In this document: piece by piece, positions 12,644-64,000 of the stretch | Layout of the letters: every line of letters begins with the position of its first letter | Numbering within the stretch: position 1 is the first letter of the stretch | Made by a program: the position numbers and the translations under genes | Notes under the pieces: model-generated | Seen by the model: the letters and a program-made list of their open reading frames with translations, nothing else | Told to the model about the DNA's origin: nothing | The model's database searches: none | Origin: Octopus sinensis | Taxonomy: Eukaryota | Direction: 5' to 3' | Assembly: GCF_006345805.1 (NCBI RefSeq) | Contig: NC_043004.1 | Span: forward strand, 91,326,001 to 91,390,000 | Length of the DNA stretch: 64,000 nt

Positions 12644-14846
12644 CACTGTGCAACGCTCAAAAAAGTACAAGAGATCTGTGGCCATTTTTATATGCAAAAT
12701 GACATGGGAAATCCATTTCTGGCCTTCTTTTTGTTGAATTAGGCGTGGTTTCTACAGAATTGTCACTGTGTACCATTTTTGTCATTATTATTAAATAAAA
12801 TTTTCTACTGCATTGTAAAATAGGATTCAACCCAGGGCTAGAAAACAATCTTAGTAACACCTGCAGTGTGATCCAAAGCTTGTGTTTAATGTTATTTTTT
12901 ATTTGTTTTCAACAATGAGTACAAGACAGTGCAAAAATGATCCAAACAGATTCTGTTATATCTGTGGGGAACCGACTTTTGCTATAGAAATGCGCAGTAT
13001 TACACGCCATATATAGAAAATATACAAGACGTACTTCGATTGTTACTTAGGAGACCAGGATAAGTCATGGGCTCCTCAAGTGTGTTGCCTTACATGTGTG
13101 AAGACATTGAGTGTCTAGCATGCAGGAAAAAATGTTCACATGAAGTTTGGTGTGCCAATGATTTGGCGTGAGCAGAAAGATCACTCTAATGATTGCTATT
13201 TCTGTCACCATGACTTTACAGGCTGTACTACAGCAAAGGAAAAGAAACACATTGTTTACCCAAATTTGCAACCAGCAATGCGCCCAGTAGAGCACTCAGA
13301 AAAATTACCTGTGCCCAAACCTCCAGATCAAGAAATGCAGAGTTCCAGCAGTGCTGATGAACATTCCAGTGGTGAATGTGTGGAGCCCAATGATCCAGAA
13401 AGTGAGAATAAACCAATACCATTTTCTCAGGAGGCTCTAAATGACTTGTGCAGGGATCTCTATTTAACCAAAGAGAAAAGTGAGTTTCTGGCATCAAGGC
13501 TTCAAGAATGTAATCGTCTTGAGAAAGGAGTGAAGATAACACTACAGAAAACGTACTGAGGATCTGCTTGCATTATTCACCATGAAGGATGACTTATGCT
13601 TTGGTAATGACATCACAACTTTTTGAGCAACTGGAAATACCATTTGATAAAACCAACTGGCGACTTTTCATAGATGCATCCAAGGACAGCATCAAAGCTG
13701 TTCTGCTACACAATGGTAACACTCTGCCTTCTGTTCCCATAGCTTATAGCACAATCATGAAAGAATCATATGAAAATCTGAAAGCAATTCTAACATGCAT
13801 ACACTATGATAACCATACCTGGCATATTTGTGCAGATTTTAAGGTTGTGGCCATGCTTACTGGCCTTCAGCATGGCTATACTAAATTTTGCTGCTTCCTG
13901 TGCTTATGGAATTCCAGAGCAAGAGCTGAACATTATGTACGCAAGGATTGGCCGATCCAAGATAAAATTGAACAAGGAAAACACAACATCATGCACAAAC
14001 CACTTGTGGAAAGTGATAAAAATTTTTTGCAACCTTTGCATATTAAACTTGGTTTGTTTAAGCAATTTGTGAAAGCCTTGGACAAGGAATCCTCTGCATT
14101 TGCATATCTTGCAGAAAAATTCCCTTCCCTGAGTCAAGCTAAAATTAAAGAAGGTTTCTCCATAGGTCCCCAAATTTGAAAAATTGTACTTGATGAAACC
14201 TTCATCACACATTTCAAGAGAAAAGAGAAGCTTGCCTTTGAGTCATTCAAGAAAGTTTGCGATAACTTCCTGGGCAAACATCGTTCAGAAGACTATGTGT
14301 AAGTTGTGAATGATCTGCTGAGTCATTATCATGATATGGGATGTAACATGTCTCAAAAAATTCATGTGCTTCACTCTCATTTGGATTTTTTTGTGGAAAA
14401 TCTTGGTGATGTGAGTGATGAACATGGCGAAAGATTCCATCAGAATATTTCAGTGATGGAGCGACGATTCAAAGGAAAATGGAACCCTGGCGTGTTGGCA
14501 GACTACTGCTGGAGTATGAAAAAAGAAGATCACACTCGGCACAAGAGGCTTTGAAGGACAAAAGTTGTTTAAACTGACAAGTGTGTTTTTAATTCATAAC
14601 CAATATATGCTTTATTATATCAACTAAATTTTTGTTTTGTTTTTCTGAAATTTACAGTATTTGCAATGTTGTGTTCAATACGCAATATTATGCAGTATAT
14701 TATAAAACGTATGGTTCATGGTACAGGAAAACGGTGCCTAATCTGGAGAAATAAAGGTCAGAATCAGAATCAGGACAATTTTTTGACCCAGAAACAAGTC
14801 TTACTTAACTTGTACATTTTTTGAACCTGAAATTTGTTGCATAGTG
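12644..14846 (+). mobile_element. Full-length Chapaev-like (CMC superfamily) DNA transposon, 2203 bp
   Basis: Termini CACTGTGCAAC...GTTGCATAGTG, with further imperfect TIR (TCAAAAAA.GTACAAG). 4-bp TSD GGCC (12640-12643, 14847-14850), supported by an empty paralogous site at 12203-12307. Superfamily assignment is from motif recall. Confidence 0.8.
12915..14554 (+). pseudogene. Disrupted Chapaev-type DDE transposase
   Basis: N-terminal Cys/His-rich region (CKNDPNRFCYICG, WAPQVCCLTC, WREQKDHSNDCYFC) and catalytic-domain motifs LFIDASK, ICADFKV, PLHIKLG, SDEHGERFHQ, LADYCW. At least 4 in-frame stops and a frameshift near 13550-13610. Confidence 0.85.
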
Positions 14847-16132: not shown

Positions 16133-16489
16133 GGATTGTGGCCGTTGCCAGCCTCGTCTGGCCCCGTGCCAGTGGCACATAAAAAGCACCATCCGATCGT
16201 GGCCGTTTGCCAGCCTCGTCTGGCTCCCGTGCCAGTGGCACATAAAAAGCACCATCTGATCGTGGCCGTTTGCCAGCCTCGTCTGGCACCTGTGCAGGTG
16301 GCACGTAAGAAGCACCCACTACACTCATGGAGTTGTTGGCGTTAGGAAGGGCATCCAGCTGTAGAAACACTGCCAGATCAGACTGGGCCTGGTGCAGCCT
16401 TCTGGCTTTCCAGACCCCAGTTGAACCGTCCAACCCATGCTAGCATGGAAATCGGACATTAAATGATGATGATGATGATGATGATGATG
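16133..16489 (+). mobile_element. RTE-tailed non-autonomous element (family of 4223)
   Basis: Same 62-bp internal units and (GAT)n tail. Confidence 0.8.
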
Positions 16490-16714: not shown

Positions 16715-17031
16715 CATCATCATCATCATCATCATCGTTTAGCGTCCGATTTCCATGCTAGCATGGGTTGGACGGTTCAACTGGGGTCTGGGAAGCCAGA
16801 AAGCTGCACCAGGCCCAGTCTGATCTGGCAATGTTTCTACGGCTGGATGCCCTTCCTAACGCCAACCACTCCATGAGTGTAGTGGGTGCTTTTTACGTGC
16901 CACCAGCACAGGTGCCAGACAAGGCTGGCAAACGGCCACGATCGGATGGTGCTTTTTACGTGCCACTGGCACGGGGGCCAGGTGAGGCTGGCAACGGCCA
17001 CAATAGGATGGTGCTTTTTATGTGCCACTGT
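16715..17031 (-). mobile_element. RTE-tailed non-autonomous element, inverted relative to the 16133 copy
   Basis: Reverse complement of the 16133 copy, with (CAT)n at its left end. Confidence 0.8.
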
Positions 17032-18029: not shown

Positions 18030-18468
18030 CATTGTGTGAGTTTGTGTGTGTGTGCATGTGTGTGTGTGTGTGTGTGTGTGTGTTATGTGTGTGTGTGTTA
18101 TGTGTGTGTGTTATGTGTGTGTGTGTGTGTGTATGTGTGTGGTGTGTGTGTGTTATGTGTGTGTGTGTGTGTTATGTGTATGTGTGTGTGTGTGTGTTAT
18201 GTGTGTGTTATGTGTGCATGTGTATGTGTGTGTGTGTGTGTGTTATGTGTGTGTGTGTGTGTGTTATGTGTGTGTGTTATGTGTGTGTATTATGTGTGTG
18301 TGTGGTTATGTGTGTGTGTGTGTGTTGTGTTATGTGTGTGTATTATGTGTGTGTGTGTTGTGTGTGTGTGTGTGTTATGTGTGTGTGTGTGTGTGTTATG
18401 TGTGTGTGTTATGTGTGTGTATTATGTGTGTGTGTGTGTTATATGTGTGTGTGTTATGTGTGTGTGTA
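18030..18468. repeat. Long (GT)n with periodic TTA interruptions
   Basis: Directly visible. Confidence 0.95.
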
Positions 18469-21329: not shown

Positions 21330-22278
21330 GTCCACCTTCTATGGCTGTTTCCAGAGTTCATGTCCTGGTAGAAAAATTAATAATACCATTCAGAATATGG
21401 CCAATTCTTGATGGAGGGTATTCTCTTGGTTGCACGTCACTGAACGGCTTCCAGACGATTAATATCCTGGGCAAGATAGGGGTTCCAGACCGGTGATGCA
21501 AATTCCAGGTGAGGTCGCACCATAGCTATATAAAGCCGCAGATAGATTGCCGGAGAGCTGCTCACAAAGGACTTGGTGAGTGATGCCAAGACACCCTCAG
21601 CCTTCTTGGCAATTTTAGCAATGTGTTTTGTCCAATGCAAATCTTTGTCAACAATAATGCCCAGGTCACGTTCACAAGAAGACTTTTTGAGATTAGTGTT
21701 GTGGAGGGAGTAAGTAGATGCTGGGTTTTTCCTCCCAAAATGCATGGTGGTACATTTGTCCACAGCCAGCTTGAGTTGCCAGTCCAAGATCCACTGCTGC
21801 ATTGTGTCCAGGTCTGATTGCAATAGAGATCTATAGTGTATAGGATCTGACCTCTTTATTTCGAGGTACAGCTTGATGTCATCTGTATATTTCAGCATTG
21901 TGGCATTCTTTAAGTTGGCATCTATGTCATTAACATATGCAACAAATAGAAGGGGGCCAAGAACAGATCCCTGTGGTACACCAGATGTCATCTCAAAGGG
22001 TGAAGAGTGCTGTGCTAGAACTGTGACAACCTCTTTTCGGCCAATAACGAAGAACTTCAACCAGTTATAGAGATCATCTCTTATGCCCAATGCAGAGAGT
22101 TTCACCATAAGTCTTTTGTGTGGCACAGAATTAAAAGCCTTAGCAAAATCCAGGTAAACAACATCCACCCAAGAGCTGCCATTAGTGATCCAGGTAATGT
22201 CCTCAAGAAACTCAATGAATTGATTACAGCAGCTGGAGTTGGGAAGAAATCCAAATTGTGACAGCTGGATGAGACCTC
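21330..22278 (-). pseudogene. CR1-clade LINE reverse transcriptase fragment
   Basis: VDVVYLDFAKAF..VPH, TSGVPQGSVLGPLLF, YTDDIKLY, ERDLGIIVD, VRPHLEFASPVWNP. Degenerate YADD motif and a premature stop. Confidence 0.9.
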
Positions 22279-37899: not shown

Positions 37900-38015
37900 A
37901 TAGTATTTACACAACTACGCTGCATACATCATACATAATACATACACACCCACACGCACATAATATCTATATATGTATATATATATATATATATATTATA
38001 TAGATATATATATAT

Positions 38016-38059
<44 letters not shown>

Positions 38060-38169
38060 CTTTATATATATATATAAGTACATATATATATCCTATATCT
38101 ATATATACATATATATATATACATATATTAATATATATACATATATATATATACATATATGTATATTTC

Positions 38170-38237
<68 letters not shown>

Positions 38238-38332
38238 TACACGCTCACACCCAACACATATATATATACATACATACATATATATATTATATATATATAT
38301 ATATATTATATATATACACACATATATATAAG

Positions 38333-38369
<37 letters not shown>

Positions 38370-38780
38370 GCAGGCATGCATGTATATATATACACATACA
38401 GACACACACGTATAAATGCATTGATGATAGGTATGCATTTATTATATATATGCATGTGTATGTGATTGTGTAAGTATGAAAAATTGATGCATTTGCATAA
38501 GAAATTCAGCTAATTTCAAAAATTCAAATATGGTAATATAATAAAACAACAATATATAAATTAAAAAGAAATTAAATATTAGCTTAATTTCTCTAAATGT
38601 TAATAATGGTTGCAATACCTGATTGTCAGGTATTGTATTATACGATAGACAACAAACACACACACTCACACACGCACACACACACACACACACATCACAT
38701 ACATATTTACTCACATAGATATGTGGGTATTTATATATATATGTATATGTATGCATTTATATATATATAATGTATATATT

Positions 38781-38811
<31 letters not shown>

Positions 38812-38854
38812 CACATATATTATATACATATAAATATATATATAAATATATATA

Positions 38855-38899
<45 letters not shown>

Positions 38900-39392
38900 A
38901 TATAAATATATATATATATGTATATATACATATATATATATATAAATGCATACATATACATATATATACATACATACATACATATACATGCATACATACA
39001 TATATATATATATATACACATACATATATGCATATATACATATATATATACATACCTATTCATATACACACATACACACACATACACACATATGTATGTG
39101 TGTGTGCTTGAGTGTATGTGTTTGTGTATGTGTATGTGTGTGTGTGTGTGTGTCCATATATGCATCTATATTTCTGTTTTGCTGTTGGATATAAAGAAAA
39201 AAAAAGACTTTTGAAAAATGACAAACCAATTCTTTTAAAAACTTCCATTGAGACAAATGTTTTGGAAGACCTGGTCATTGAAATGTCGACATATACGCAT
39301 ATGCATCAATGTATGAATATATTCACACACTCACACGCACTCATATATATATATATATATATACATACATACATATGAATATGTATATATAA

Positions 39393-39451
<59 letters not shown>

Positions 39452-40387
39452 TATATATATATACATGCATATGTAAAATGTATATACATATTTATATATA
39501 TATATAAACACACATTTCTACAATTACATACATACAAAGTGTGTATTTTAATGTTAAAAATATTATAACAAACGTTTTTGTAAATTTGCACCAGGGTGGG
39601 CAATTTGCTAGTTTCCATCCCAAAAATGACAAATACAATCGACTAGTTTATAATACAGATATCTCATATGATACAGTATAACATTCTATACCACAGAGGA
39701 ATATCAACTATGTCAATAAATGTTACAGTATTCTGTAGGATTTTTTGAGAGAGATTAAAAAAAAAAGATTATTCAATGCAAATTTGGTTGTTAATAATTA
39801 TATTATATAAAGAGAAAACAGTTACTTATGTATTTGTGTTTCTTTACATCAACCACTATGAGTAAATATGAAGATTTTTCACATAAAATGATAAAATATT
39901 GCTACCGTTGTTCGTGTAGGACTGTGTGTGTGTTTGTTCATTTATATATACATACTCACACATATTCATACATACAGATATGCATGCATATATATATGTG
40001 TGTGAGTGTGTGTGTGCTTGTATGTATATATAAATATTTGCACACATATATCACATATATATATATATGCATTTGTATACACACACACACATACACAAAT
40101 TTATATTTAAATCCTTCATCATAAAAATGGAGGACTTTACTCAAAAAATCAAATTGAAGATCATTATCTAAGTATACTGACACAAGGTAACACACACATG
40201 CACTATACATACATCAATAACCCACCACAAATATACGTAAATACATGTGTATGTATGCATACATATATATATATGTATATATATATATGTATGTATGTAT
40301 AAACATGTATGTGTGTGTATACATATGTATATATTTATACATATATGTATTACATATATATATTTATACATATGTATATATATACAC

Positions 40388-40428
<41 letters not shown>

Positions 40429-41196
40429 TATATACACACATATATTATACACATATATATATATACACACATATACATGTATATATATACATATAGTTTT
40501 ATATATATAGATATATGTATGTGTGTATATATAACATACGTATAAATAATATATATATATATATATATCTATATATATATACACACATAAGTAATATGTA
40601 TATATATATTATATATATATATATTTATATTTACATATACACATACGTATATATATAACATATATTATATATATATGTTATATATTTACATATATATATT
40701 ATATATATATATGTAAATAAATATATACGTATGTATATATACACACACATATATATATATTTATATATATACACATATATGTGTATATATATACATATGT
40801 ATATATAGACATATATATGTGTGTATATATATATACACACATATGTGTATATATATAGACATATGTATAAATATATATATGTAATACATATATGTATAAA
40901 TATATACATATGTATATACACATATGTATAAATATATACAAATGTATATGCACATGTATAAATATATACATATGTATACACACACACACACATATATATA
41001 TATACACCTACACATATGTATATACATATATGTGGATCTAAATATATATTTATGTATATATATATTTATATATATGCATATATGTATAAATGTATATTTT
41101 ATATATATACATTTTTTGTGTACATATATGATGCAGGTCTGTGTAATGTTTGCATCTATCTATCTAGCTATCTATCTATGTATCTATCTATCTGTC

Positions 41197-41245
<49 letters not shown>

Positions 41246-41273
41246 TATTATTATATATATATATAAATATATT

Positions 41274-41304
<31 letters not shown>

Positions 41305-41427
41305 ATCTATATATATATATATATACATACATATATATATATTATATATATAATAAATATATTTATATATATATATATTATTTTATATATTATATAAATA
41401 TATTATATATATAGATATATTTATATT

Positions 41428-41466
<39 letters not shown>

Positions 41467-42071
41467 CATAAGAGAGAGGGAGAGAGAGAGATACACGCCA
41501 TGCATACATATGTATATGAGTATACATACATATGTAGATATCTATGTATACATACATATCTATCTATATATCTATACACATACACACAGATATATTTATA
41601 CACACATATATATATATACATATAAATCTATGTTTTAAATATGTATCTATATATATATATACACACACACAGATATAGATATGTGTATGTTTATGTATAT
41701 GTGTGTGTGTATATGTATATGTGTGTATATATAGATACATATACACATACACATATACACACACAGACACATACACACACATAGACACATACAAACACAC
41801 ACAGAGACACTCACACACATACATATATGGATACCCCATGTATTGTATTGATACACGGCTTCAATCATACGTTTTTGTGTGTTGTAGAAATTAACCGTAG
41901 CCATTTTTGCTATTATCTAGAATATGGAAAAAAGAGTCAGAATTTTGATAGAAAAAGAACATTGTGCTTGAATAAATGAAAGACTGTTTTGTTATTGTTG
42001 ATTTTTGTTCATAGATAGAATTCAAAAAGTCTTATAAAAAACGTATCTTCTAATTTACATACGTACTCCAA

Positions 42072-50724: not shown

Positions 50725-53700
50725 GTGAGAAAGAAAAGAAGAGAAAGATAGATAAAAGAGAGGGAGAGAGATGTATGTGGTCACATTAATTTTTAGTACA
50801 AATTATGTCTGAATGTAGGTTAATTAAAAAGCATTCCAGAGCATAAATGCTTGAACACACACACAAATATTTAGAAGGCTGGATAGCATATGTAAGATAT
50901 TATTATTATCATTATTACCACTACTACTACTACTGTTATATTAATTAAATGATATGTTATGTAATAGATATTAGTGATATATTTGACAAGATGAGAGGGC
51001 AAGAGACCTGAATGCATGGAGACAGGAATAATATATATATATAATATATATCTCATTGATTCAGAAAAAATATTAAATATCTGAGGCAGAAAGAGCTTCA
51101 GATTTGAGTTTCTTGCAAAATTGTAAGGGAAATTATTTTGGTCTTCCTGTGAACATTAGATTGCAATCTTTTAAAAACCATCTGATACCTAAGACCATGT
51201 AAAGCAATCAAACTCAAAAGACAGGTAAACATGCACACACGTGCACACACACATACACACACACACACACACACAAACACACACATACACACACACACAC
51301 ACCACCCTTCAATGAAGACTGCATGCTCGAAATATATAAATGCATTCAGGGAATGTTTGAAAAATTCCAGTTTCACAGGGACATATTTTTCAGCCTGCTA
51401 AAGGTTGAAAATAATTTCCAAGTTGATTTCAAAGAAAATTCATCTGAAACATGGAAATTGCTGTTTCTGACTTAGTAATTCAATATGTATCTCTCTGAAT
51501 CAATAACAGCTCACCACTATATATCTCGTGTTTAAGTGTGCTTATATTTTTGACTTACCAACTAACAATCACTATATATATATATTATATCCAAGTTGAC
51601 AGTTTACTCTGAGTTCCAATTTTAGCTGGGCTGTTTATGATAGAAGTGAACAGCCCAGCTGAATGTAAAACTCAGAGAAGACTATCAACTTTCATGTTAT
51701 AAAGATATATCTAGCCAGTCTTTCCAACATATTGAGTTCTATTTCAGATAATGTTTGCACAATGTAAAACATATTCATGATATATTTTACTACTGGTACA
51801 TTTATAAATACATACATATATACATACACATATATATACATATATGTATACACACACACATATATATATCAATACACACATACATATGTACACACACATA
51901 TATATTTGAAACTTTAGTTTTTAATGAAATCTATATTTTCTGTTTTGTGTATTGAGTACATTTTCCTATTTGCTAAAACAAATGTCTATCAACCCATATG
52001 TATACATACATATATATGTAAGTCAGAACTGCTGGAGGTAGCTGTATCTACTAATATAGTTGTGCTCAGGTGAATATTTAATAAGACAGAGCACCTAGCG
52101 ATAACAGAAACTGCTAAAACAACTATTACATTGCTAGAGAGAGTAGATACATCTTACGTGTGAAGTACTTCATATTAGCTGACTGCTACAAACATCCTCC
52201 TCGGCTTCCATCCACTGTATCTAACCATAAAAATACTAGGTGTCATGATTTTTATCATGTTTGTTTGCTTGATGAATTAACTAGTTGTTTCAGAGCCCTG
52301 TACTCTAATAACCTAGAAACTACTGAAGCTAATAACATACAACTTATGCATTTACATCTACTGAGCAAACTAATTTTTAAAGTTTGTTTTTATATCTATT
52401 AAGTTATTTGGCTTTAAATTATGTTGTCGTTTTCTGTTGAATTTAAGGAACACTATGATTTAATATACAATAAGTGAATTAAAAAGAAATCTGTCAACAC
52501 ACATCTAGATGCAAGATAACACAATATCATTTGCATATTGATGGTTATAAGGGTTATTTCATGCTTCCCAAAATTTGCCAACAATATTCTTGAAGTGTCT
52601 ATGCACCCTTTTCCCCTTACGGCTCTTTTACTGTTCCCTTTTTGTGTACTGTGCATGTACTTTTGGCTATCATTGCTGTTTTCCTATCCCCCCTTATACC
52701 CTTTTTCCTGTGAGTTGTAGTGTACCTAAGCACGATATAGAATAATCTCATTTGTTATCATTTTTATCATATATCAAGAAATATATTCACACACATGAGT
52801 ACATAACAACACAATATTGTCCTGATATTGTTGGCGATAAGTGTATATAATATAAAATATTATAATATTTACCAAATATCAAAAAAATATATTTACACAC
52901 ACAACACATTGTCTTTAGAAACTAATCAATGTGTCCTTACATTTTTTAAGATGGTAAGGGTATGATGAATGAAATTCAGCTACTATTTCTAGCATGTTAA
53001 ACAAACAAGTGTATAGTCCCTAATTTACTTGAGATATTGGTGGTTTTCATAGTTTAGCAGTATAAAATATATTCCCATTCTGACCAAACATATAGAGAAA
53101 TACATTCACACATGGGTGTACACAAACACAGTTACTTTCAGATATTTCTCTTTATAATAATTCTTTTTAATTTTGGACTAAGGCCAGGAGAGGGGGTAAT
53201 TTGATTACATTGACTCCAGCACTTGATTCATACTTTATCTTATTGACCCTGAAAAGAGGAATTGCAAAGTTGACCATGACAGGATTGAAACTCAAAACAT
53301 AAGGAGTCAGGAAAAATGCCACTAAGTATTTTGTCCAACCCACTGATAGTTCTGCTAGCTCGCCATCTTGATTTTGGGTTATAATAATAATTACTAACAA
53401 GGGAATAAGGTTACAGTTATTAGGGTATGAGAACAGTTGGCATTTATTCTGTTGACTATCAGTAAGAATTTGAATCTAGAAAGTGAAGAGATGGAAGTAA
53501 ATACTGCAAAGCATTATGTACAATGCTCTAGTGATTCTGTCACTAGTTACCATATATCAGTAGTTATAATATAGTGTCTATAATAGGGTATTTGGCTAAA
53601 ACAATAGTTATTTGTCTAAGATACATTCAAATGCTGATCAGTCAATCATGACTTTAACTTCTTTCAGCCAGAGATAGTGACCATGCTGGGACACTTCTAT

Positions 53701-55418
53701 TAAATGCTAATAGTGTTTATGTGGTGGGTATCAAATCCAGGCTGCCTTGCCGAAAGCCAGGAACCCTAACCTCTTGACCACTCATTTATTTTATATATAT
53801 TGTTCCATGTTAACATGGTTCAAGAAATAAATTATTGAGATGTTGTTTTAGAGATGGATGCCCTTCCTGTTGCTAACTATTCTCTGTTATTCAAGTAATG
53901 GACTTTTCATTTCACTTGTTTTCAAAAGAGCAAAGTTATCAGACAATTTGTTGACTGAGAAATGGCAATAAACAACATTGTCCATAGTTCAGTTCAGCTC
54001 AAAACAAATATTCACACACGCACATAAATGTGTGTGTGCATGTGTGTGTGTGTGTTATATGGCAGGCTTTGTACAGTCTCCATCAATCAAATTCATTTGC
54101 AAGGTGTTGGTTGGCTTAGCGCTTATAGTAGAAAGCACTTGCTCAAAGTGCCATGCAGTGAGATTGAACCTGAAACCACATAGTAGCAAAGCAAACTTCT
54201 TAACCATACAGCCATGGCTGCATCTGTGTATATAGAAGAGAATTTGTGTCTTGTTTTTCATTTGTTAATTTTTTTGGTTAACATTGGGTAAAACATTTCT
54301 TCTGAATATATGGATAGGTGTATATCTAAGATTATCCCAATTATAATTCTCAGCTGTACAAGTTTCGATATTTAGAGAGCAATATATATTCTTTCATGAC
54401 AGCTCAATAAACACATGTCTAAATACAATTGCATGCATAAAGCTTATATGTGAAATGTACCAACACATATAAAAACTCTCCTTAATTGAAGTGGTTGACA
54501 TCTTTCCTTTGCAGAAAAAAGTGAGAGAAAGGCAAAGAAGAGATTGGGTGAGGGAACTATTTTTACCTTAACTAATGTTAAAGAAGCTTGAATGAAATAT
54601 AGATCAAAATGAAACCGATGACCCAGTTTCCAGTGATTTGATAATGCTAAAAGTAATGATTTCTAACAGGCAAAATTTGGTAGGATTATTGTCTGTTGAC
54701 TGGCTGGTACTGACTTGAGAATAATGAAAAGTGAAGTCAACATTGGTCAGATATTAATTGAAAATGAAAAAGGAAGGCTAAAAAAACAACAAAAGGCATG
54801 TTGTTCAACACTATACCAATTCTGACATTCTAACATCCTCAGAATAACAATAATATTGATTTCAAATTTTGGCAAAGGGCAGCAATCTTGGGGGAGGAGT
54901 AAGTCAGTTACATCAACCCAACTGTTCAACTTGTATTTATTTTATTGACCCCTAAAAATGATGAAAGGCAAAGTGGACCTGGCAGAATTTGAACTTAGAA
55001 TGTGAAGACAGAGGAAATGCTACTAAGCATTTTGCCCATTGTGCTAACAATTCTGCCAGCTTGCTGCCTTCAGAATAATAATAATATTAACAATAGCAAA
55101 AGCAATAATAACAATATCAGTAACAATAGTGGTCTCTGATTTAAGATACAAGACCAGCAATTTTAAAGGGAGGAGATAGTCAATACTATTGACCTCAGCA
55201 TTTGATTGGTAATATATGCTATTAATTCCGGAGGGAAGAAAGGCTAAGTTGACCTCAGCTGGAGCTGAACTCAGAAAGTATAGGGTCAGAGAAAATAGTT
55301 AAAGGCATTTTCTCAGATACTCTAATATTTCTGCTAATAATAATTTTCATTGGTACTAGGTACATACTAAAATGGAAACAATAATGTATATTGGTGTTTG
55401 GTTGTGTGTATGTATGTT

Positions 55419-55453
<35 letters not shown>

Positions 55454-55852
55454 GAATGTATGTATGCATGCAAAATAAAATATGTAAAAATGCCTGTAAT
55501 GCTATAAAATGAATAGATACACTGTATGATCACCCATACACATACACATATAAACACATTGCATATTATATTACATATATGTATATATGTATAAATATAT
55601 AAATATATTATATATTATAATTTAGGGTTTCTAAGAGATACCACCACGCTGGAAATAGCAGCCAAAACTTGACTCTAAAACCACATTACCTTTGAAGGTT
55701 TTTATTCCCATGCTGGCCACCTGATAAGATCGGTATTTAAATAATCATCTTATCCTTATTTATATAAATATATTATATATTATATAGATATATGTAAATA
55801 TATACATTTGCATAAATCTGTACATGTACATACAGGTATGTACGTACATATG

Positions 55853-55892
<40 letters not shown>

Positions 55893-56504
55893 CATACGTA
55901 CATATACACACACATATATAATGGTAATGTAACTGCTCAGACTTTAAATTCAAGTAACATTAAACATTGTAACTTACTCTACTCTGCAGAAAAAAAAGAA
56001 ACAAAACAAAAGAATCTATAAAAACAAACAGGTTTAATAGCAAATTTGAGAGAGAGAACACAGTCATAATGTTGCATAACTAGTAGTATGTTTACATGGT
56101 TAGTGACAGTGGTTTGTGGTAAAGTTAGTACCAGTACTATCTACCAGGCATTTTAAAACTCTTAACAATCAATACACACATGCACACATATATATCATTT
56201 AGCATAGTGATACTAATAACCTGGTGCTTAGAACTCAATGTACATATGCTTTAGAACAAAGTATCGGTCAAGTACAAAGTAGTAATAAGAAATTGTCATG
56301 AACTTTATTATCTTGAAGCTGCTTCAGCTATAAGATGCAATGCACTCATAAATTGAATGCTTGTGTATCACCCGATAACTTCATTGGAGCTTCAAACATG
56401 AAGAGCACTTCATGACTGAAGAAACAGCTGTAAGCTATTGAAGTTCATGAAATAATTTCTTATTGCTTTGTCATTTTAATTTCTTATATATATATATATA
56501 TAAT

Positions 56505-56612
56505 TAGGGTGTTAGAAACACCTATATTGCTATAAACAAGAGCTAAAATGCTCTAATACTGTAGAGCATTTTAGCTCTTGTTTCTAGCAATGGAGGTGTT
56601 TCTAACACTCTA
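56505..56612. repeat. 108-bp fold-back: 51-bp arms, 4 mismatches, 6-nt loop
   Basis: TAGGGTGTTAGAAACACC...AAAATGCTCTA atactg TAGAGCATTTT...GGTGTTTCTAACACTCTA. Confidence 0.9.
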
Positions 56613-56883
56613 GTCGCATTTAGTGACAATTATAGTTTACCTTTTTGGTAAAACATTGCACACTACTGTGTATATTAATTTTATATATATATATATACAC
56701 AAAATTTAAAGGACTGACATATATATATATGTACACATGTATTTATATATCTATTGTCGTGCACACACACACACACACACACACATGCACACTCACAGGC
56801 ACACATGTATATGTACTAACTTTTGGTGAATAGTTTTAAAAAAGTTATCAAGCCAACAATACACTGTGCATATGATGATAATG

Positions 56884-56921
<38 letters not shown>

Positions 56922-57588
56922 TCTTTCTACTATAGGCACAAGGCCTGAAGTTTTGTAGGAGAGGCACAGTCAATTCCATTGGCCCTTAGGCTCAACTGCT
57001 ACTTATTTCATCAATTCTGAAAAGATGAACGGCAAAGTTGACCTTAGTGGAATTTGAACCCAGAACATAGACAGCCAGAACAAATACTGCTCCTCATTTT
57101 TGTGGGACAGTCTAATGCTAGTAATATCAAATACTAATTTTAATACAGATTTTCAACAGCATTTGTACATTAGGTATTATCCTGTGACTTGTATCAGAAC
57201 TGAAGGTCACCCTACCTCTGTGTGTGTGTGTGTGTGTGTCTGTATCTTTTATTCTTTTCCCTTTTCAGTCAATGGACTACAGCTTAGCTGGAGCCTGACT
57301 TTGAAGGGTTTCATTAAACAAATTCACCCCAGTACTTATTTTGTTTTAAAGCCTGGTACATATTCTGTCAGTCTGTTTTTGTCAAACTGCTAAGTATGTA
57401 TACAAATTGTTTTAGTGGCATGAGGGTTAATGAAGGATGCTTTAGTGTCTTCATGTGAAACGAAGGGAAATGAATCTATATTGCAGACTCACCTTGACAG
57501 TCATGTTTACTTTGCATAATAATGCTCACCAATTTGATAAATATCAATGGAATTTCATTTGACCTACTTATTCCATCATATGCATGCT

Positions 57589-57658
<70 letters not shown>

Positions 57659-57777
57659 CATATACATACATCATATCAAAAGGGAAATGGAATTTAATTA
57701 AATTTAAATTATTCAATCAAAATTTACAATTCCAGTGGTCTAACGTGCAAAAAATTTGTCAAAAAGACTATATATCA

Positions 57778-58027
57778 ATTATACGATAGTGTATATTTAT
57801 ATACACATAAGGAATCTACACTTAGGATGAAGATTCAGCACATTAAGAGCCACAAAAATAATGGACAAGATTCGACAGGAACAAAATTTGAAATGGTAAA
57901 TGTTTTTCATTTTCAAATTTTGTTCCTGTCGAATCTTGTCCATAATTTTTGTGGCTCTCTAATGTGCTGAATCTTCACCCTAAGTGTAGATTCCTTATGT
58001 GTATATAAATATACACTATCGTATAAT
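57778..58027. repeat. 250-bp fold-back: arms of about 117 bp with a few differences
   Basis: ATTATACGATAGTG...GAACAAAATTTGAAA / TTTCAAATTTTGTTC...CACTATCGTATAAT. Confidence 0.9.
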
Positions 58028-58586
58028 GTATATACATACATATATATATGCATACATGTACACGCATATGTATGCATATCTATCCATCTGTCTATCTATC
58101 TAGCTACCAATCTATCTATCTATCTATCTTGACGTTTTTATTGTTGCTGTTCTTGAAGTTGTAAGCTAATCCCAATGTTCATCTTTTGCTATTATATGTG
58201 CTTTTTCTTTTTGATTTCTTGTTAATTAATAAGTAATTTTAAAATACTAAGATTACTTTTAATTAATTCCCTAACCACACTTTTTTTGTCAGAACAAACA
58301 CTCATTCTCTCTCTTCTCCCTCTTGTCTCGCTCTCTCTTATCTTTGAAAATGCCCATGACTCTTGGGTGTGTTTACATGCATATGTGCATGCATGTGTAT
58401 GTAATTATATATATATCATATATCCTTGTTTATGTTTTCCTTGTAAGAAATATATATATAGATCAAAACAGTTTGATTAAAATTTGTTAGTACTCTTAAA
58501 ACTCAAGAGTACCAACGAATTTGAATCAAACTGTTTTGATCTATACATGTAACTCCCAGTGGCTTTCTTTCGTTTGTCAAGTCACT

Positions 58587-58655
<69 letters not shown>

Positions 58656-59077
58656 TACAAGGAAAATGTAAGCAAAGGATATCTATGTTTCACCTCAGCG
58701 GGCATTGACAGACAGTTGGTAAACTGGTAGTTTGAAGTAATAGTCAACCTTTTCTTGGCAAAGATTATTAGATATGTAGTCAACTAACATCTACTTGATT
58801 TTACTTTAGTTTAATGTCAATTTTTTTTGTTATATATAACATTACATAAATACAGGTGTACATGCATACATATAAACATATATATACATATATATATATA
58901 TACACATGCACTACATATATGTATGTATGTATGTATATATATATGTATGTATATACATGTAAACATGTGCATATATATATGTATATGTGCACATATATAC
59001 ATACATGTATATGTGTAAATATATATATGTGTATATATAAATATATGTATATGTATATATGTATATATATACATATA

Positions 59078-59109
<32 letters not shown>

Positions 59110-59230
59110 CATATATGTATGTATATATATATATACATATATGTATATATACAAATGTGCATATATATGAATATGTATATATATATATATATATGTATAT
59201 ATATGTGTGTATATAAATATATATAAATAC

Positions 59231-59274
<44 letters not shown>

Positions 59275-59899
59275 GCATATACATTTATATACATATATAT
59301 ATTGTAAAGGACAAATATTGCAACAATAATGTCCCAGTTCAATGAGTAGACAGTATCCCTCAAGCTGTGATGAATGCAAGAGATTCTGGGAGAAAAATAT
59401 GTGCAGATGATGATGGAATTGACCAACACATGGGAAAAAAAAAAAAAAATATTAAAAAAAAGTCATAAAGAAATCCACACCTGTCTGTTTCGCGATTCTG
59501 CGACCCATTTTTGAAAGAAACTTTTTTATTGTTTAATTAATTTTGCTGCATAATTGTTGCTCATTACTTTATTGTGCTTTTACACACATACATACACAAG
59601 CACACACAAAGAACCAGTTTTATATTGGCATTCTGTAATAATGTACCTAGTCTTTGCTCTTGCTCATTTCTCTGCAGGTATTGCTGTAGTTGACGTTGTT
59701 GTTGTAGTTGTTCTTGCTGTTTCTCTTATTGCTAATTGCTGTTGTTGTTAGTGTTATTGTTTAATGTAGTTATTTTGTTTTTCAGTTTATTTTCACATGG
59801 CCAGTTTTCTTTCTTTCTTTTATTTTGCTTCTGTGTTTTTTTTTTTTTTGCATTTATTTTTTTTATTATTTTTTAAATGTTTTTGGTTAAAAGAGTGTT

Positions 59900-60570
59900 T
59901 AAGTATAGCGGCGATATAATTGATTGAAGTGTATTACTGGTACATGTTTTTAATCGAAAGCCCCGGAAGATGGAAGGCAAAGTAATCGACCCCGGTAGCA
60001 TGGTCGAATAATTAATAATAGTAATAGTAATAATAATAATAATAATGATTTTTTTTTTAGTTTTAGGCAAAAGGCCAGTTTGATGTAAGGAGAAAGATGG
60101 TAAGTCGACCAAATTGAATCCAGTATATTACTGGTACTAATTCTATTTCTCCTTCTTCTGGAGGGGTGAAAGGCAAAATTAACCTCTGGAGGCAAAATGG
60201 GCATACAAATAATAATAATTATAATAATAATAATCATAGTCTGTTTTGAGTAGGCACACAAGGCCAATTTCTGTAGTAGGAAGGGAGTAAAGTTGATTAC
60301 AACTCCAGTGTACCACTGGTATGACTGGTACTTCATTTATCGATCCCCTGAGGGATGAAAGGCAAAGTTGACCCTGGCGGGATTTGATCTCGGTATCATT
60401 AAGAAGGAAGAATTTTAATAATATCGATTTTGTTGTTAGGCAAAAAGCCAATATAATGTCTTGTAAGAGGTGGTTATAGTCAATAGAATCGGCTCCAGTT
60501 TTTTATTCTTCATTGAATCGCACCGAAGGAATGAAAGGCAACGTCACTCCTTCTGGCAAGATTCACACAA
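59900..60570 (-). mobile_element. Tandem cluster of about 4 decayed SINE copies immediately 3' of Kv1
   Basis: Repeated GAAAGGCAAAGT.GACC / GTACTTCATTTATCGATCCC motifs of the 1337 family. Confidence 0.7.
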
Positions 60571-60977
60571 TCAGAACCAACAGGGAAGATATATTATAAT
60601 TGTAATAACTATAACAACAGAAGTTCTCCTGAAAAGTGGTTCTACTGATTTTTTTTTTTAATCATTTTCGTTTCGGTTTAGGTTTTCTGTAAATAAATTT
60701 CCAAATATGTCTTTGATTCCTCTATTTAATCACCATTTAATTATTGAATTTAACTCATTTTTGTCATTCACAATGAGGGCTGTTTTCCTTATGTTACTGC
60801 ATTTAATTAATAAATAGTTTTTCTTAAACTTAATATAATAGTTTTTCTTTTCTAAATAGTTTTCTTTTTTCTTTCTTTCAGACATCAGAAGATTCTATTT
60901 TAGTTCATCTTCATGTTTTGCTTCAGTATCATCATCCTCTACTTCTTTATCTTCTTATAAACAGCAAACTCCATATT

Positions 60978-62409
60978 TCATACATCGGTTTGCATGCTTA
61001 GATTATTTTTGATATGATTAAACCCTATATTATTCGTATTGCTAATATGCCCTTCTTTCCATTTCTCCGTGTACATACTTGCTTCATCTATCTCCATTAT
61101 ATCAGACTCAACTTCCGATGTATAAGAGCTTATCTTTTCATCATAGTAACCCGTCGCTGACGTTACATGGTGGTACCTTTCTTTGTCGTCAGTAGATTCC
61201 GTGTCTCTGTGATAGAAATAATTAAAGTTCGACACAATGACCGGAACGGGCAGGGCAATAGTCAACACTCCAGCAATAGCACAGAGCGATCCGACTAATT
61301 TACCATACACGCCTATTGGCGACATGTCACCATAACCGACGGTTGTCATGGTGACGACGGCCCACCAAAAGGAATCGGGAATGCTTTTGAAATGGCTCTC
61401 TTCGGTGTCCACTTCGGCAAAATATACCGCACTGGAGAACAACACAACGCCAATGACAAGAAAGAAAATCAGTAAACCTAACTCTCGTAAACTGGCCTTC
61501 AAAGTTTGACCAAGGATTTGAAGCCCTTTGGAATGACGTGACAGTTTAAAGATACGGAACACTCTCACAAGACGGATAACCCTTAAAATAGCCAGTGACA
61601 TGTTTTGCTTGTCTTGACTATTTGTATCATTTTGAATGACAGTCCCTAAAGTAATAAAGTAAGGTATAATCGACACGATATCTATAGCATTCATACTGTC
61701 CTTAAAGAAATCCAATTTCACAGGACAGGAAGCGAAACGTATTAACAATTCCATAGTAAACCATATTATGCATCCGGTTTCAATGATGAAAAATGGCGTG
61801 CCGAATTTTGGCATGGCATCATCTACAATAATGGTATCATTGAGTAGTTCATATCGTTTGAATTCCGGTAAGGTTTCTAAGCAAAACGTAACGATTGATA
61901 TAACAATAATGCTGACAGACATTATGGCGATTACACGAGCAGGGGTAGAACTTTCTGGATGCTCAACCAGTAGCCACACACGTCGCTGGAATTCGTTCTC
62001 GGGAAGAGGTTTTTCTTCTTCTTTGATAAATCCCTCTTCTGCACGGTATTTTTCAATGACCTCTTCGCCGAGTTCGAAAAACTTAATCTCCTCCAGGAAT
62101 ATATCCAATGGAACATTAGAAGGTCTTCGAAGACGACCTCCACTGTGGTAGAAATACAGGATGGCATCAAAACTGGGACGATTTCTATCGAAGAAATATT
62201 CATTGCGGTAAGGGTCGTAATAGCGGTTCCGCTTCTTAGGGTTACCTAACAGCGTATCCGGAAACTGACTAAGAGTTCGTGTTTGTGTTTCGAACCTTAG
62301 CCCGCTTACGTTGATGATAACACGATCTGACCGCTTGTACATTCGAAGAGAGCCACTACCAGCATCCAACTGGTTGTTCTCTTCATCCGGGTTTTTTAAG
62401 TCCAGAGAC
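60978..62409 (-). CDS. Kv1.1: Shaker-related voltage-gated K+ channel (octopus Kv1.1-like); large coding exon, N-terminal start codon in an upstream exon not identified here
   Basis: T1 domain ([31 protein letters not shown]), S4 with R/K at every third residue ([17 protein letters not shown]), pore [16 protein letters not shown]6 PVP and C-terminal MQTDV. A pyrimidine tract plus CAG acceptor lies at 62410-62430 (phase 2). The Kv1 family call is near certain; the exact paralog is about 0.75. Confidence 0.97.
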
Positions 62410-63460
62410 CTGTGAGAAAAGAAAGAAAGAAGGTTATGATAAATATAGAGAATCAATTGTGGTTGATATTACTGCAGAAACATTAATAACAATTAATAAC
62501 ATTTAATATTAATAATCATCATTGCAACATAAGAAAGCAAGAAATCATAACAAAACTGAGGTGACTGTTTCAAACTGCTATCATGGGAATGATGTGGCAG
62601 CAGGGTGGAGTTGTACCCATAACAAATAGTCATTGGACCACTTCATTTGATTTAAAGGAGTTAATAACAAGGTACCATACAGATAAATAGTCCTCTGAAA
62701 CAAAGAATTGGGAGAGAGAAGATTATAGTAAAGGACAAAAAAGTGTTAGAGATTGATGAAATAAGAGAGAAAGGCCTGGAAAGGGAAGGAAAGAGATAGT
62801 GAGAGAACAAGGTGAGTAGGAAGGTGAAAAGTCATAGATAAATAAATGAGAGAGACCGACAGAAAGAGAGTAAAAAAAGGGGGGGTGTTGTTTAGATATA
62901 CATGTTAGTGTGTAGAAGAGAATAGAAAGATGTAGAGTGAGACATAGATAAATAGATGTACTAGTGTCAAGAGGAAGAGAGAAAACTAGAATTATAGATA
63001 GATGCATTTGAGTGAAAGAGAGAGCAAGGAGAGAGTAAGGAGAGAGGTAGCCAGACTGACAAACTGACGGACAAATGTGTCAGTGTCCGGATGCAGTGAC
63101 ATAAACATTGATTTTCTGGTTTGGTTGAATGGTTTAATGGATGTGATAGTTTCATATCAATGTAGTTAACATATACCCATGCTCACATGTCCATAAATAC
63201 ATACAGATACACATGTACAGATACATGCATATGACATATACACCTATAAGAATACATACGTGTACATTTGCACAAACACAAACACGCACACACACACACA
63301 CATGCACCAGAGATACGTGTGTAACTGTAAAACACTACTTCACCCAAGTTTATCATTTTTATTTCCTTTGTACATTATATATTGTTTGAAACAATAAATT
63401 AAAAGAAAAATACATATACACCTTCCTATATGTGTGTGTGTGTGTATATATATATATATA

Positions 63461-63690
63461 CTTTATTTAAAGCAGCAGAAAATTCAACAAAACCTGTTAC
63501 TCTGAGTTTCCCGTTGCCGTTCATCGGACAGTTTTTCTAGCAAAAACTGTCCGATGAACGGCAACAGGAAACTCAGAGTAACAGGTTTTGTTGAATTTTC
63601 TGCTGCTTTAAATAAAGCATATTACTCTACCACTGGTATTTGAGTACTCTTTTTTCCACCTTGTTTCACATTTATGTGTTTACTCTGGTA
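63461..63690. mobile_element. Probable Penelope-like pseudo-LTR fragment with an inverted partial copy (76-bp hairpin arms)
   Basis: Arms 63461-63536 and 63542-63617 differ by one mismatch; CTAGC loop; a one-sided tail runs to 63690; flanked by (TA)n; contains a minimal hammerhead-like motif. The PLE assignment is inference. Confidence 0.55.
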
Positions 63691-63716
63691 TATATATATA
63701 TATATATATATATATA

Positions 63717-63790
63717 CTAGCTGGTGTACCCAGTAATTCCTGGGGGTAAAGATGTTCTATTGAAACGCCCTATTACTCCGATATAGGAAA
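63717..63790 (-). mobile_element. Helitron-like 3' terminus
   Basis: The minus strand reads CCCAG-GAATTA-CTGGG hairpin, an 8-nt spacer, then CTAG|T. A similar plus-strand end (GCAACGCCGGG..CTAG|T) lies at 17072-17100. Confidence 0.45.
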
Positions 63791-64000
63791 GCAATTTCGT
63801 TATAACTGCCACAAAAGGTGTATTTTCCATCATGAAAATGTACAAAAACTGTCACCTAGAGAAGGGAGAGGTTGTCAGATGTTGTGGAGAGAGGTTGTCG
63901 GAGGTTGACAAGAGAGGTTGTCGTTCACAGAAAAACTATTGTTTTATCTTGAGAAAAGCACTGTTGAAGTGCTAAGTGAAATTTGGCAATCGAGGATCGA

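What the first reader, a model, noticed from the sequence alone, without database searches (positions are those of the whole stretch)
60978..62409. Unedited genomic template of the heavily A-to-I recoded octopus Kv1.1: five recalled editing sites line up
Seen in sequence: numbering the first full exon codon (Ser, 62408) as residue 8 gives N40 = AAC (62312-62310), S54 = AGT (62270-62268), N105 = AAT (62117-62115), I167 = ATC (61931-61929) and I321 = ATT in S5 GLLIFF (61469-61467). Established (Garrett & Rosenthal 2012, recalled from memory): N40S, S54G, N105G, I167V and the cold-associated I321V are recoding edits of octopus Kv1.1. Each codon here converts to exactly that residue by A-to-G; S54G needs an AGY codon, and it is AGT. 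Inference: this is that gene or a very close paralog, and the genome carries the unedited alleles.
Basis: partly seen in the sequence, partly recalled or inferred. Interest (0 to 1): 0.7.

Follow-up and report, generated by a model that had tools for sequence, protein, structure and literature searches.

The report
Octopus Kv1 channel gene, RNA-edited

Summary
Observation confirmed. Window 60978-62409 (minus strand) is one 1,432-nt coding exon running from a canonical acceptor to a TGA stop. It encodes 476 aa with a T1/BTB_2 domain and a six-TM Ion_trans domain, and all five codons are as stated.

The protein is 100% identical to Octopus bimaculoides/O. sinensis KCNA1 isoforms. It falls in the same 90% cluster as squid SqKv1A. 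The +7 numbering equals annotated isoform X3 (483 aa, MRDLTIG-); other isoforms give +5, +8 or +33, and their first exons lie outside the window.

Four of the five recalled sites are in an independent published RNA-seq table for O. bimaculoides (Zhang et al. 2023, Table S5-1). They map to the predicted bases:
- N40S, 62311, level 0.33
- S54G, 62270, level 0.50
- I167V, 61931, level 0.82
- I321V, 61469, level 0.56

The same table adds I135V (62027), M170V (61922) and I372V (61316). N105G is not listed and stays unverified; the primary paper was not available.

The genomic A is kept at all eight codons in Octopus, Argonauta and Sepia. The dsRNA substrates remain only predicted. Verdict: correct but already known, low interest.

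The parts
60978..62409 (-). Main (last) coding exon of the octopus Kv1 / KCNA1-like gene: third base of a split codon, 476 codons and the stop
   Evidence: 100% identical to XP_036361480 residues 8-483.
62410..62435 (-). 3' splice site: polypyrimidine tract (cttctttctttcttttctcac) and AG at 62411-62410
   Evidence: All four annotated N-terminal variants end in a codon whose last base is G (W, G, G, R), which fits the split codon.
62049..62321 (-). T1 tetramerisation domain (Pfam BTB_2); holds N40, S54 and N105
   Evidence: E 1e-27, exon residues 30-120.
61206..61937 (-). Six-TM voltage-sensor and pore domain (Pfam Ion_trans); holds I167, M170, I321 and I372
   Evidence: E 7.7e-51. Aligns with Shaker and Kv1.2 structures.
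62311..62311 (-). Edited adenosine, N40S (AAC>AGC); published level 0.33 in O. bimaculoides
   Evidence: Table S5-1, CDS position 32, N11S of the 454-aa model.
62270..62270 (-). Edited adenosine, S54G (AGT>GGT); level 0.50
   Evidence: CDS position 73, S25G.
62116..62117 (-). The two adenosines of N105 (AAT).
   Evidence: for the codon. The site is absent from Table S5-1. It lies in a patch with many synonymous changes versus Argonauta.
62027..62027 (-).
   Evidence: An I/V variant occurs at the same residue among cuttlefish-like RNA contigs and in the SqKv1A cDNA.
61931..61931 (-). Edited adenosine, I167V (ATC>GTC); level 0.82
   Evidence: CDS position 412, I138V.
61922..61922 (-).
   Evidence: In a cuttlefish-like species the genomic contigs have A and the mRNA contigs have G at this base.
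61469..61469 (-). Edited adenosine, I321V (ATT>GTT) in S5 (ELGLLIFF); level 0.56. This is the temperature-associated site
   Evidence: CDS position 874, I292V. S5 position from the alignment to Shaker structures. Function as summarised in PMC5705066.
61316..61316 (-).
   Evidence: A in genomic contigs versus G in mRNA contigs of the cuttlefish-like species.
61326..61343 (-). K+ selectivity filter TVGYGD
   Evidence: Translation; aligned with Shaker.
60978..60989 (-). C-terminal T-D-V followed by the stop TGA (a Kv1-type PDZ-binding end)
   Evidence: The PDZ-binding role is from general knowledge of Kv1 channels.
61908..61936 (-). Predicted 5' arm of a long-range exonic duplex that contains I167 and M170 (a lead only)
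   Evidence: the same pairing appears in the MFE folds of Octopus, Argonauta and the cuttlefish-like mRNA. It is not significant against synonymous shuffles and shows no covariation.
61664..61691 (-). Predicted 3' arm (codons 247-256, S3) pairing with 61908-61936 (a lead only)
   Evidence: It lies in the synonymous-change-free run of codons 233-258, which holds no listed editing site.
62199..62408 (-). Codons 8-77: no synonymous change between Octopus and Argonauta; holds N40 and S54
   Evidence: a run of 69 degenerate codons, reached in 0 of 20,000 permutations. The RNA fold has z = -2.99.
61380..61499 (-). Codons 311-350: second-longest synonymous-change-free run; holds I321
   Evidence: P about 1e-4 for a second run this long. 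The local fold has z = -1.56, which is not significant.

Best explanation
Window 60978-62409 (minus strand) is the large 3' coding exon of the octopus Kv1 delayed-rectifier K+ channel gene. This gene is annotated KCNA1-like and is the orthologue of squid SqKv1A. It is the gene whose mRNA editing Garrett & Rosenthal described in 2012.

One of several far-upstream alternative first exons supplies 5 to 33 N-terminal residues. With the 7-residue one (isoform X3, 483 aa) the published numbering applies.

Shown here:
- The genome encodes A at every editing position.
- In neural RNA of O. bimaculoides, by published RNA-seq, 33-95% of transcripts carry G (inosine) at seven positions: N40S, S54G, I135V, I167V, M170V, I321V and I372V.

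Inferred: the editing is done by ADAR enzymes acting on double-stranded structures formed by the exon itself.

From the literature, as summarised in a review: the Ile-to-Val change in the pore domain destabilises the open state, speeds channel closing, and is edited more in cold-water species.

Unverified here: N105G, which needs two adjacent edits (AAT>GGT).
For: Anatomy and codons.

Domains: (BTB_2 at 1e-27, Ion_trans at 7.7e-51). The best structural relatives are Shaker and Kv1.2.

Identity: 100% to O. bimaculoides and O. sinensis KCNA1 isoforms, and the same 90% cluster as SqKv1A Q25376.

Offset: +7 is unique and equals isoform X3.

Published sites: Table S5-1 of PMC9989829 lists 7 A-to-I recoding sites for 'potassium channel Kv1' Ocbimv22027865m.g. 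All 7 codons match the window under a single possible CDS start, the ATG of M30.

DNA versus RNA in a relative: in a cuttlefish-like species, genomic contigs and mRNA contigs differ at only 2 of 1,431 nt. Both differences are A>G, at codons 170 and 372.

Other orthologue variants: among decapod orthologue sequences, 11 of 12 variable residues are of the A>G type.

Conservation: the editable A is kept at all 8 codons in Octopus, O. vulgaris, Argonauta and Sepia. Six of the 7 listed sites lie in the five longest runs without synonymous change between Octopus and Argonauta.

Exonic substrates: PMC7192619 states that mature squid K+ channel mRNA can be edited by squid ADAR2 without intron sequence.

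Function of the pore-domain site: PMC5705066.
Against: - N105G is not in the published table.
- The primary paper and its GenBank records could not be consulted, so the equation of the table's I292V with 'I321V' rests on the +29/+7 arithmetic and on recall.
- No RNA reads from the window's own species were available.
- The dsRNA substrates are not demonstrated. Best-duplex energies are not beyond synonymous-shuffle controls. The S1/S3 helix shows no covariation. The S54 hairpin is not conserved in Sepia.
Confidence: 0.92

Rival explanations
1. The exon belongs to a paralogous octopus Kv1 gene, and the five residue matches are a coincidence of a conserved family.
For: Kv1 channels are very conserved. 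N40, N105, I167 and I321 are also N/N/I/I in the nearest paralogue (P0006).
Against: - The exon is 100% identical to the RefSeq KCNA1 isoforms and clusters at 90% or more with SqKv1A, whereas the nearest paralogue is 78% identical.
- The paralogue has Ala at the S54 position and a different length, so the numbering would not hold.
- Only one offset fits.
- The published editing table for 'potassium channel Kv1' fits the window codon for codon.
Confidence: 0.02
2. The gene is right, but the recalled list is partly wrong. N105G is not a real or appreciable editing event in this species, either because it is specific to other (for example polar) species or because it was misremembered.
For: - It is not among the 7 high-confidence sites of Table S5-1.
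- Codon 105 and its neighbours 106-108 all carry synonymous changes between Octopus and Argonauta, unlike the surroundings of the confirmed sites.
- It has the weakest best-duplex energy of all the sites tested.
Against: - The table's filter removes clustered sites and sites below a level of 0.1, so two adjacent edits could have been dropped.
- With the offset fixed by the other four sites, residue 105 is indeed Asn (chance about 5%).
- Both As are conserved in every genome compared.
Confidence: 0.3
3. The A/G differences reported in RNA are genomic polymorphisms or sequencing artefacts rather than editing.
For: I had no reads. The cuttlefish-like comparison uses assemblies from different runs, possibly from different individuals.
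Against: - All seven published changes are A>G on the sense strand, each seen in 4 samples at intermediate levels.
- The only 2 differences between genomic and mRNA contigs of the cuttlefish-like species are A>G, at two of those same codons.
- The exon is otherwise invariant: 0 of 1,431 differences between two Octopus species.
Confidence: 0.02

Closest known systems
Octopus Kv1.1 (Kv1) mRNA editing, Garrett & Rosenthal 2012, Science 335:848
   Same: Same gene by every test I could run. The numbering fits the 483-aa isoform. The Ile-to-Val site lies in the pore domain (S5). The same four sites are edited in an independent O. bimaculoides data set. The function is as summarised in PMC5705066.
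   Different: Nothing different was detected. The window is genomic DNA from a relative of O. vulgaris rather than their cDNAs. I could not verify their full site list, N105G in particular.
Squid SqKv1A / SqKv1.1A delayed rectifier and its editing (Rosenthal & Bezanilla 2002, Neuron 34:743)
   Same: Orthologue: same 90% cluster and the same single large coding exon. The squid cDNA P0128 differs from related sequences almost only by A>G-type changes, including the T1-domain Arg-to-Gly at octopus residue 82, which is squid 87. I135V, M170V and I372V vary in decapod sequences as well.
   Different: The octopus protein differs from the cuttlefish-like decapod orthologue (P0129) at 25 of 476 residues. 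The N-terminal exon differs: +12 in the SqKv1A cDNA, +1 in the cuttlefish-like mRNA contigs. N40S, S54G, I167V and I321V were not seen as variants in the few decapod sequences on hand.
Human/mammalian KCNA1 (Kv1.1) I400V editing by an exonic hairpin (Bhalla et al. 2004)
   Same: Same channel family; an Ile-to-Val recoding by ADAR; a substrate made of exon sequence only.
   Different: A different residue: S6 'PVPVIV' in mammals versus S5, S1, T1 and the outer pore here. The octopus codon at the mammalian position is not in the published octopus list. Mammals have one site; octopus has at least seven.
Drosophila Shaker editing (four sites; Ingleby et al. 2009, PMC2606942)
   Same: A Shaker-family channel recoded at several positions by ADAR.
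   Different: The sites arose independently. In the stored part of the supplement (the file was cut when stored), the octopus Kv1 gene ID occurs only in Table S5-1 and not in the shared-site table S5-2 of PMC9989829. Shaker editing substrates involve introns (general knowledge).

Membership tests
Kv1 / Shaker-type voltage-gated K+ channel (KCNA) | N-terminal T1 tetramerisation (BTB_2) domain | tested here: met
   PF02214, E 1e-27.
Kv1 / Shaker-type voltage-gated K+ channel (KCNA) | Six-TM Ion_trans domain with an S4 arginine ladder and the TVGYGD filter | tested here: met
   PF00520, E 7.7e-51. [17 protein letters not shown] and TVGYGD are read. Aligned to Shaker and Kv1.2 structures at E about 1e-190.
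Octopus Kv1.1 of Garrett & Rosenthal 2012 (orthologue of SqKv1A) | Orthology to squid SqKv1A rather than to another Kv1 paralogue | tested here: met
   Same 90% cluster as Q25376. The nearest other octopus Kv1 is 78% identical.
Octopus Kv1.1 of Garrett & Rosenthal 2012 (orthologue of SqKv1A) | Numbering that puts Ile 321 in S5 and N40, S54, N105 and I167 as stated | tested here: met
   The numbering equals annotated isoform X3, 483 aa.
Octopus Kv1.1 of Garrett & Rosenthal 2012 (orthologue of SqKv1A) | Sequence identity with the deposited cDNA and genomic records of that paper | not testable with these tools
   Neither the paper nor its GenBank entries are on hand.
ADAR A-to-I recoding substrate | Genomic A where RNA shows G (inosine) | tested here: met
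   Met for N40S, S54G, I135V, I167V, M170V, I321V and I372V: window codons against Table S5-1 of PMC9989829. Not met, or unknown, for N105G.
ADAR A-to-I recoding substrate | Edited adenosine lies in a double-stranded RNA structure | tested here: inconclusive
   - I167, M170, S54 and I321 are paired in the predicted folds.
- The S1/S3 duplex recurs in three lineages.
- The energies are not beyond synonymous shuffles, there is no covariation, and the S54 hairpin is not kept in Sepia.
- Codons 8-77 fold with z = -2.99.
ADAR A-to-I recoding substrate | Editing depends on an ADAR enzyme | not testable with these tools
   Literature only: squid ADAR2 edits mature squid K+ channel mRNA in vitro (PMC7192619).

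The most novel reading that the evidence does not exclude
The exon carries its own editing-site complementary sequences, and these are what freeze its synonymous sites.

Specifically, codons 165-175 (S1; holding the I167V and M170V adenosines) would pair over about 26-29 bp with codons 247-256 (S3), some 250 nt downstream. This duplex is predicted independently in Octopus, Argonauta and a cuttlefish. Both arms sit in runs with no synonymous change between Octopus and Argonauta.

The complete absence of synonymous change in codons 8-77 would likewise mark the structured substrate for N40S and S54G.
Probability: 0.25. Interest if true: 0.4.

Novelty: already known. Interest (0 to 1): 0.2.

Why it matters
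It matters mainly as a control. A reader with no tools recognised a famous gene and predicted editing positions to the base, and four of the five were confirmed against an independent published data set.

Biologically, the locus is the classic example of environmental tuning of a channel by RNA editing, so nothing new is learnt about the phenomenon.

The by-products may help anyone mapping the still-undescribed RNA structures that direct editing in this mRNA:
- synonymous-change-free runs that coincide with the editing sites;
- a candidate exonic duplex for I167V and M170V;
- A>G differences between cuttlefish-like genomic DNA and mRNA at codons 170 and 372.

Tried and rejected
Literature.
- Garrett & Rosenthal 2012 (PMID 22223739 / PMC4219319), their Physiology review (PMC4208822), Rosenthal 2015 (PMC4487009), Liscovitch-Brauer 2017 (PMC5499236) and Albertin 2015 (PMC4795812) are not held.
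- Full-text searches for I321V, N40S, S54G, N105G and I167V found nothing relevant.
- The supplements of PMC8382921 and PMC5850729 had nothing on this gene.

Alternative 5' exons. A six-frame search of the window found none. The gene spans 297 kb in O. bimaculoides and 122 kb in O. sinensis, so their DNA could not be fetched.

Octopus RNA contigs.
- Exact-product look-ups of P0001 and P0122 found nothing.
- A second protein search with the N-terminal 212 aa returned no cephalopod fragments.
- Seven of the 22 cluster members could not be listed.

RNA structure.
- The best-duplex test against 150 synonymous-codon shuffles was not significant for any site. The best results were I372V (7 of 150) and M170V (15 of 150).
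- A covariation count on the S1/S3 helix found 0 compensatory pairs.
- The S5 region fold has z = -1.56.
- The S54 hairpin is broken at 4 of 16 pairs in Sepia.

Proximity test. The permutation test of synonymous differences within +-5 to 15 codons of the edited sites was only marginal for Argonauta (P = 0.04-0.13) and not significant for the decapod comparison.

A correction. The Logan contigs that I first took for squid are cuttlefish-like: 6 synonymous differences from the Sepia pharaonis genome.

Full report
OBSERVATION

On the minus strand, a polypyrimidine tract and CAG (AG at 62411-62410) are followed by an exon beginning with G at 62409. The frame is then open from TCT at 62408 to TGA at 60980-60978, which is 476 codons.
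- AAC, 62312-62310
- AGT, 62270-62268
- AAT, 62117-62115
- ATC, 61931-61929
- ATT, 61469-61467, inside GLLIFF

All five reach the named residue by A>G changes alone.

I scanned 310 numbering offsets. Only +7 matches more than two of the five residues, and it matches all five. Composition predicts about 5e-4 such offsets.

WHAT IT IS

The product has a T1/BTB_2 domain (1e-27) and an Ion_trans domain (7.7e-51). It shows the S4 arginine ladder, the TVGYGD filter and a C-terminal TDV. Its best solved relatives are Shaker and Kv1.2, at E about 1e-190.

It is 100% identical to O. bimaculoides KCNA1 isoforms X1-X4, which are also annotated in O. sinensis. It sits in one 90%-identity cluster with the O. 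vulgaris 'channel Kv1', an Argonauta hians orthologue and squid SqKv1A (Q25376). The nearest other octopus Kv1 is 78% identical. So this is the orthologue of the squid delayed rectifier and not a paralogue.

The isoforms differ only in what precedes SLDLK:
- 33 residues in X1
- 8 residues (MRSFDSEG) in X2
- 7 residues (MRDLTIG) in X3
- 5 residues (MPEMR) in X4

Each variant ends in a codon whose third base is G, which fits the split codon at 62409.

These first exons are not in the window. The annotated gene spans 297 kb in O. bimaculoides and 122 kb in O. sinensis.

SPECIES

The exon DNA is 1431/1431 identical to O. vulgaris. The flanks align almost continuously, with about 2% substitutions. 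The window is therefore from a very close relative of O. vulgaris. I infer O. sinensis, but the tools could not settle this.

THE EDITING SITES

The primary paper and related reviews are not in the library, and no open paper names these sites.

An independent source does exist. Table S5-1 of Zhang et al. 2023, Cell Rep (PMC9989829) lists high-confidence A-to-I recoding sites from RNA-seq with matched genomes. For O. bimaculoides gene Ocbimv22027865m.g ('potassium channel Kv1, partial'; KQ416235, minus strand) it gives seven sites, each seen in 4 samples:

| CDS position | Codon change | Residue (454-aa model) | Level |
|---|---|---|---|
| 32 | AAC>AGC | N11S | 0.33 |
| 73 | AGT>GGT | S25G | 0.50 |
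| 316 | ATC>GTC | I106V | 0.77 |
| 412 | ATC>GTC | I138V | 0.82 |
| 421 | ATG>GTG | M141V | 0.95 |
| 874 | ATT>GTT | I292V | 0.56 |
| 1027 | ATA>GTA | I343V | 0.89 |

If that CDS starts at the ATG of M30 (62342-62340; the 454-aa model P0122), all seven codons match the window. No other start in the ORF satisfies them. Adding 29 converts the residues to the 483-aa numbering:

| Site | Window coordinate |
|---|---|
| N40S | 62311 |
| S54G | 62270 |
| I135V | 62027 |
| I167V | 61931 |
| M170V | 61922 |
| I321V | 61469 |
| I372V | 61316 |

Three further sites, two of them the most heavily edited, were missed.

N105G is not in the table. The table's rules drop clustered sites and sites below a level of 0.1, so its absence is not decisive. 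With the offset fixed by the other four sites, residue 105 is indeed Asn. The site remains unverified.

SUPPORT FROM RELATIVES

The A or As of all eight codons are kept in genomic DNA of the window, O. vulgaris, Argonauta hians, Sepia pharaonis and two Sepia-like sets of public contigs.

For one Sepia-like species there are two kinds of contig:
- genomic contigs, with an intron acceptor upstream (L018-L023);
- spliced mRNA contigs (L003-L012).

These differ at only two of 1,431 bases. Both differences are A in DNA and G in RNA, at codon 170 (M>V) and codon 372 (I>V). So these two octopus sites are edited in decapods too.

Among the squid SqKv1A cDNA and the decapod contig products, 11 of 12 variable residues are A>G-type changes. 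They include I135V and the T1-domain Arg-to-Gly at squid position 87.

HOW IT WORKS

Shown: genomic A, with RNA G at intermediate to high levels.

From the literature:
- Editing of a nonsynonymous site in octopus Kv1.1 is higher in cold-water species, destabilises the open state and speeds closing (PMC5705066). The assignment of that site to I321V is from recall, and it fits the S5 position found here.
- Mature squid K+ channel mRNA is edited by squid ADAR2 without intron sequence (PMC7192619).

Inferred: exonic double-stranded structures guide ADAR.

I looked for such structures.

Full-exon folds pair I167 and M170 with U residues about 250 nt downstream, in a duplex of about 26-29 bp. The arms are 61908-61936 and 61664-61691, that is, S1 against S3. 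The duplex appears in Octopus, Argonauta and the cuttlefish-like mRNA alike. However:
- its energy is within the range of synonymous-codon shuffles;
- it shows no compensatory changes (20 pairs invariant, 2 changed on one side only, 4 broken in Sepia).

S54 sits in a hairpin stem within codons 8-77. That segment folds better than all 200 shuffles (z = -2.99), but the hairpin is not kept in Sepia. The region around I321 is not exceptional (z = -1.56).

The substrates therefore remain predictions.

SYNONYMOUS-SITE PATTERN

Octopus and Argonauta differ at 82 codons, of which 81 are synonymous. The differences are strongly clumped. The five longest runs without synonymous change are:

| Codons | Length (degenerate codons) | Permutation result |
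|---|---|---|
| 8-77 | 69 | reached in 0 of 20,000 |
| 311-350 | 40 | P about 1e-4 for a second run this long |
| 122-150 | 29 | not tested |
| 233-258 | 25 | not tested |
| 163-186 | 23 | not tested |

Six of the seven listed sites fall in these runs. The one run without a listed site (233-258) holds the predicted partner arm of I167/M170. N105 lies in a divergent patch.

A direct proximity test is only marginal (P = 0.04-0.13). Between the window and O. vulgaris the exon has 0 changes, where the flank rate predicts about 31, or about 8 at synonymous sites only (P about 5e-4). This fits the published general idea that editing constrains cephalopod coding sequence. That idea is recalled from Liscovitch-Brauer et al. 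2017, which I could not read here.

COMPARISON AND NOVELTY

This is the known octopus Kv1.1 editing case, the orthologue of the known squid case. It is related in kind, but not in position, to mammalian KCNA1 I400V and to Drosophila Shaker editing.

Nothing in the finding is new. 'The genome carries the unedited alleles' is what RNA editing means. The only possibly new leads are the candidate exonic duplex and the coincidence of frozen synonymous runs with editing sites. Both are unproven.

VERDICT

- Observation: confirmed.
- Interpretation: supported for gene identity, numbering and four of five sites; N105G unverified.
- Novelty: already known.
- Interest: 0.2.

Noticed in passing
window 60978-62408 vs L002 24762-26192; flanks 51186-64000: The coding exon is 1431/1431 identical in DNA to O. 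vulgaris, while the surrounding non-coding DNA differs by about 2% substitutions plus indels. Synonymous sites are frozen, and the window comes from a close relative of O. vulgaris (probably O. sinensis), not from that assembly.
   Followed up: partly
window 62199-62408, 61380-61499, 61980-62066, 61656-61733, 61872-61943 (minus strand): Between Octopus and Argonauta the 81 synonymous differences are clumped. Runs without any change cover codons 8-77, 311-350, 122-150, 233-258 and 163-186. Six of the seven published editing sites fall inside these runs.
   Followed up: yes
L018-L023 (genomic) vs L003-L012 (mRNA), codons 170 and 372; equivalent to window 61922 and 61316: Public contigs of a cuttlefish-like species (6 synonymous differences from the Sepia pharaonis genome) show A in genomic contigs and G in spliced mRNA contigs at exactly two bases, giving M170V and I372V. 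This is evidence that these two sites are edited across octopods and decapods.
   Followed up: yes
window 61908-61936 and 61664-61691 (minus strand): A predicted duplex of about 26-29 bp between S1 and S3 coding sequence holds the I167 and M170 adenosines. It recurs in the folds of three lineages, but it is not significant against synonymous shuffles and has no covariation.
   Followed up: yes
window 61470 (minus-strand base 5' of the I321 adenosine): The I321V adenosine has a 5' G in octopods (ctgATT). By general knowledge this is the neighbour ADARs like least, yet the published level is 0.56. Sepia has ttaATC here.
   Followed up: no
P0128 (SqKv1A cDNA) vs P0129-P0134: The squid cDNA differs from related decapod sequences at D10G, Y31C, I38V, R82G (squid 87), I135V, M170V, I174V, I251V, I255M and I372V. 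All are A>G-type changes, so the 1996 clone is itself an edited molecule.
   Followed up: partly
L003-L012, about 60 nt upstream of the CDS: In the cuttlefish-like mRNA contigs the start ATG is formed across the exon junction: AT comes from the 5' exon and G is the first base of the big exon. This gives a +1 isoform (M-SLDLK...).
   Followed up: no
window 21437-22168 (minus strand): An ORF fragment with a reverse-transcriptase domain (RVT_1, 1.2e-23), which is a retroelement remnant downstream of the channel gene.
   Followed up: partly
window 4228-4378, 16134-16316, 16885-17030: A repeated G+C-rich element of about 63 nt, in both orientations. It is also found many times in the Argonauta and O. 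vulgaris loci, so it is probably a SINE-like repeat.
   Followed up: no
window 40259-41743, 37963-39093, 58866-59302, 18033-18467, 8203-8353: Very long (AT)n, (TG)n and (CCA)n microsatellites. These create the long spurious 'ORFs' in the ORF list.
   Followed up: no
window 13589-14179 (+): A 196-aa ORF of normal composition with no Pfam match. It may be a transposon-derived remnant.
   Followed up: partly
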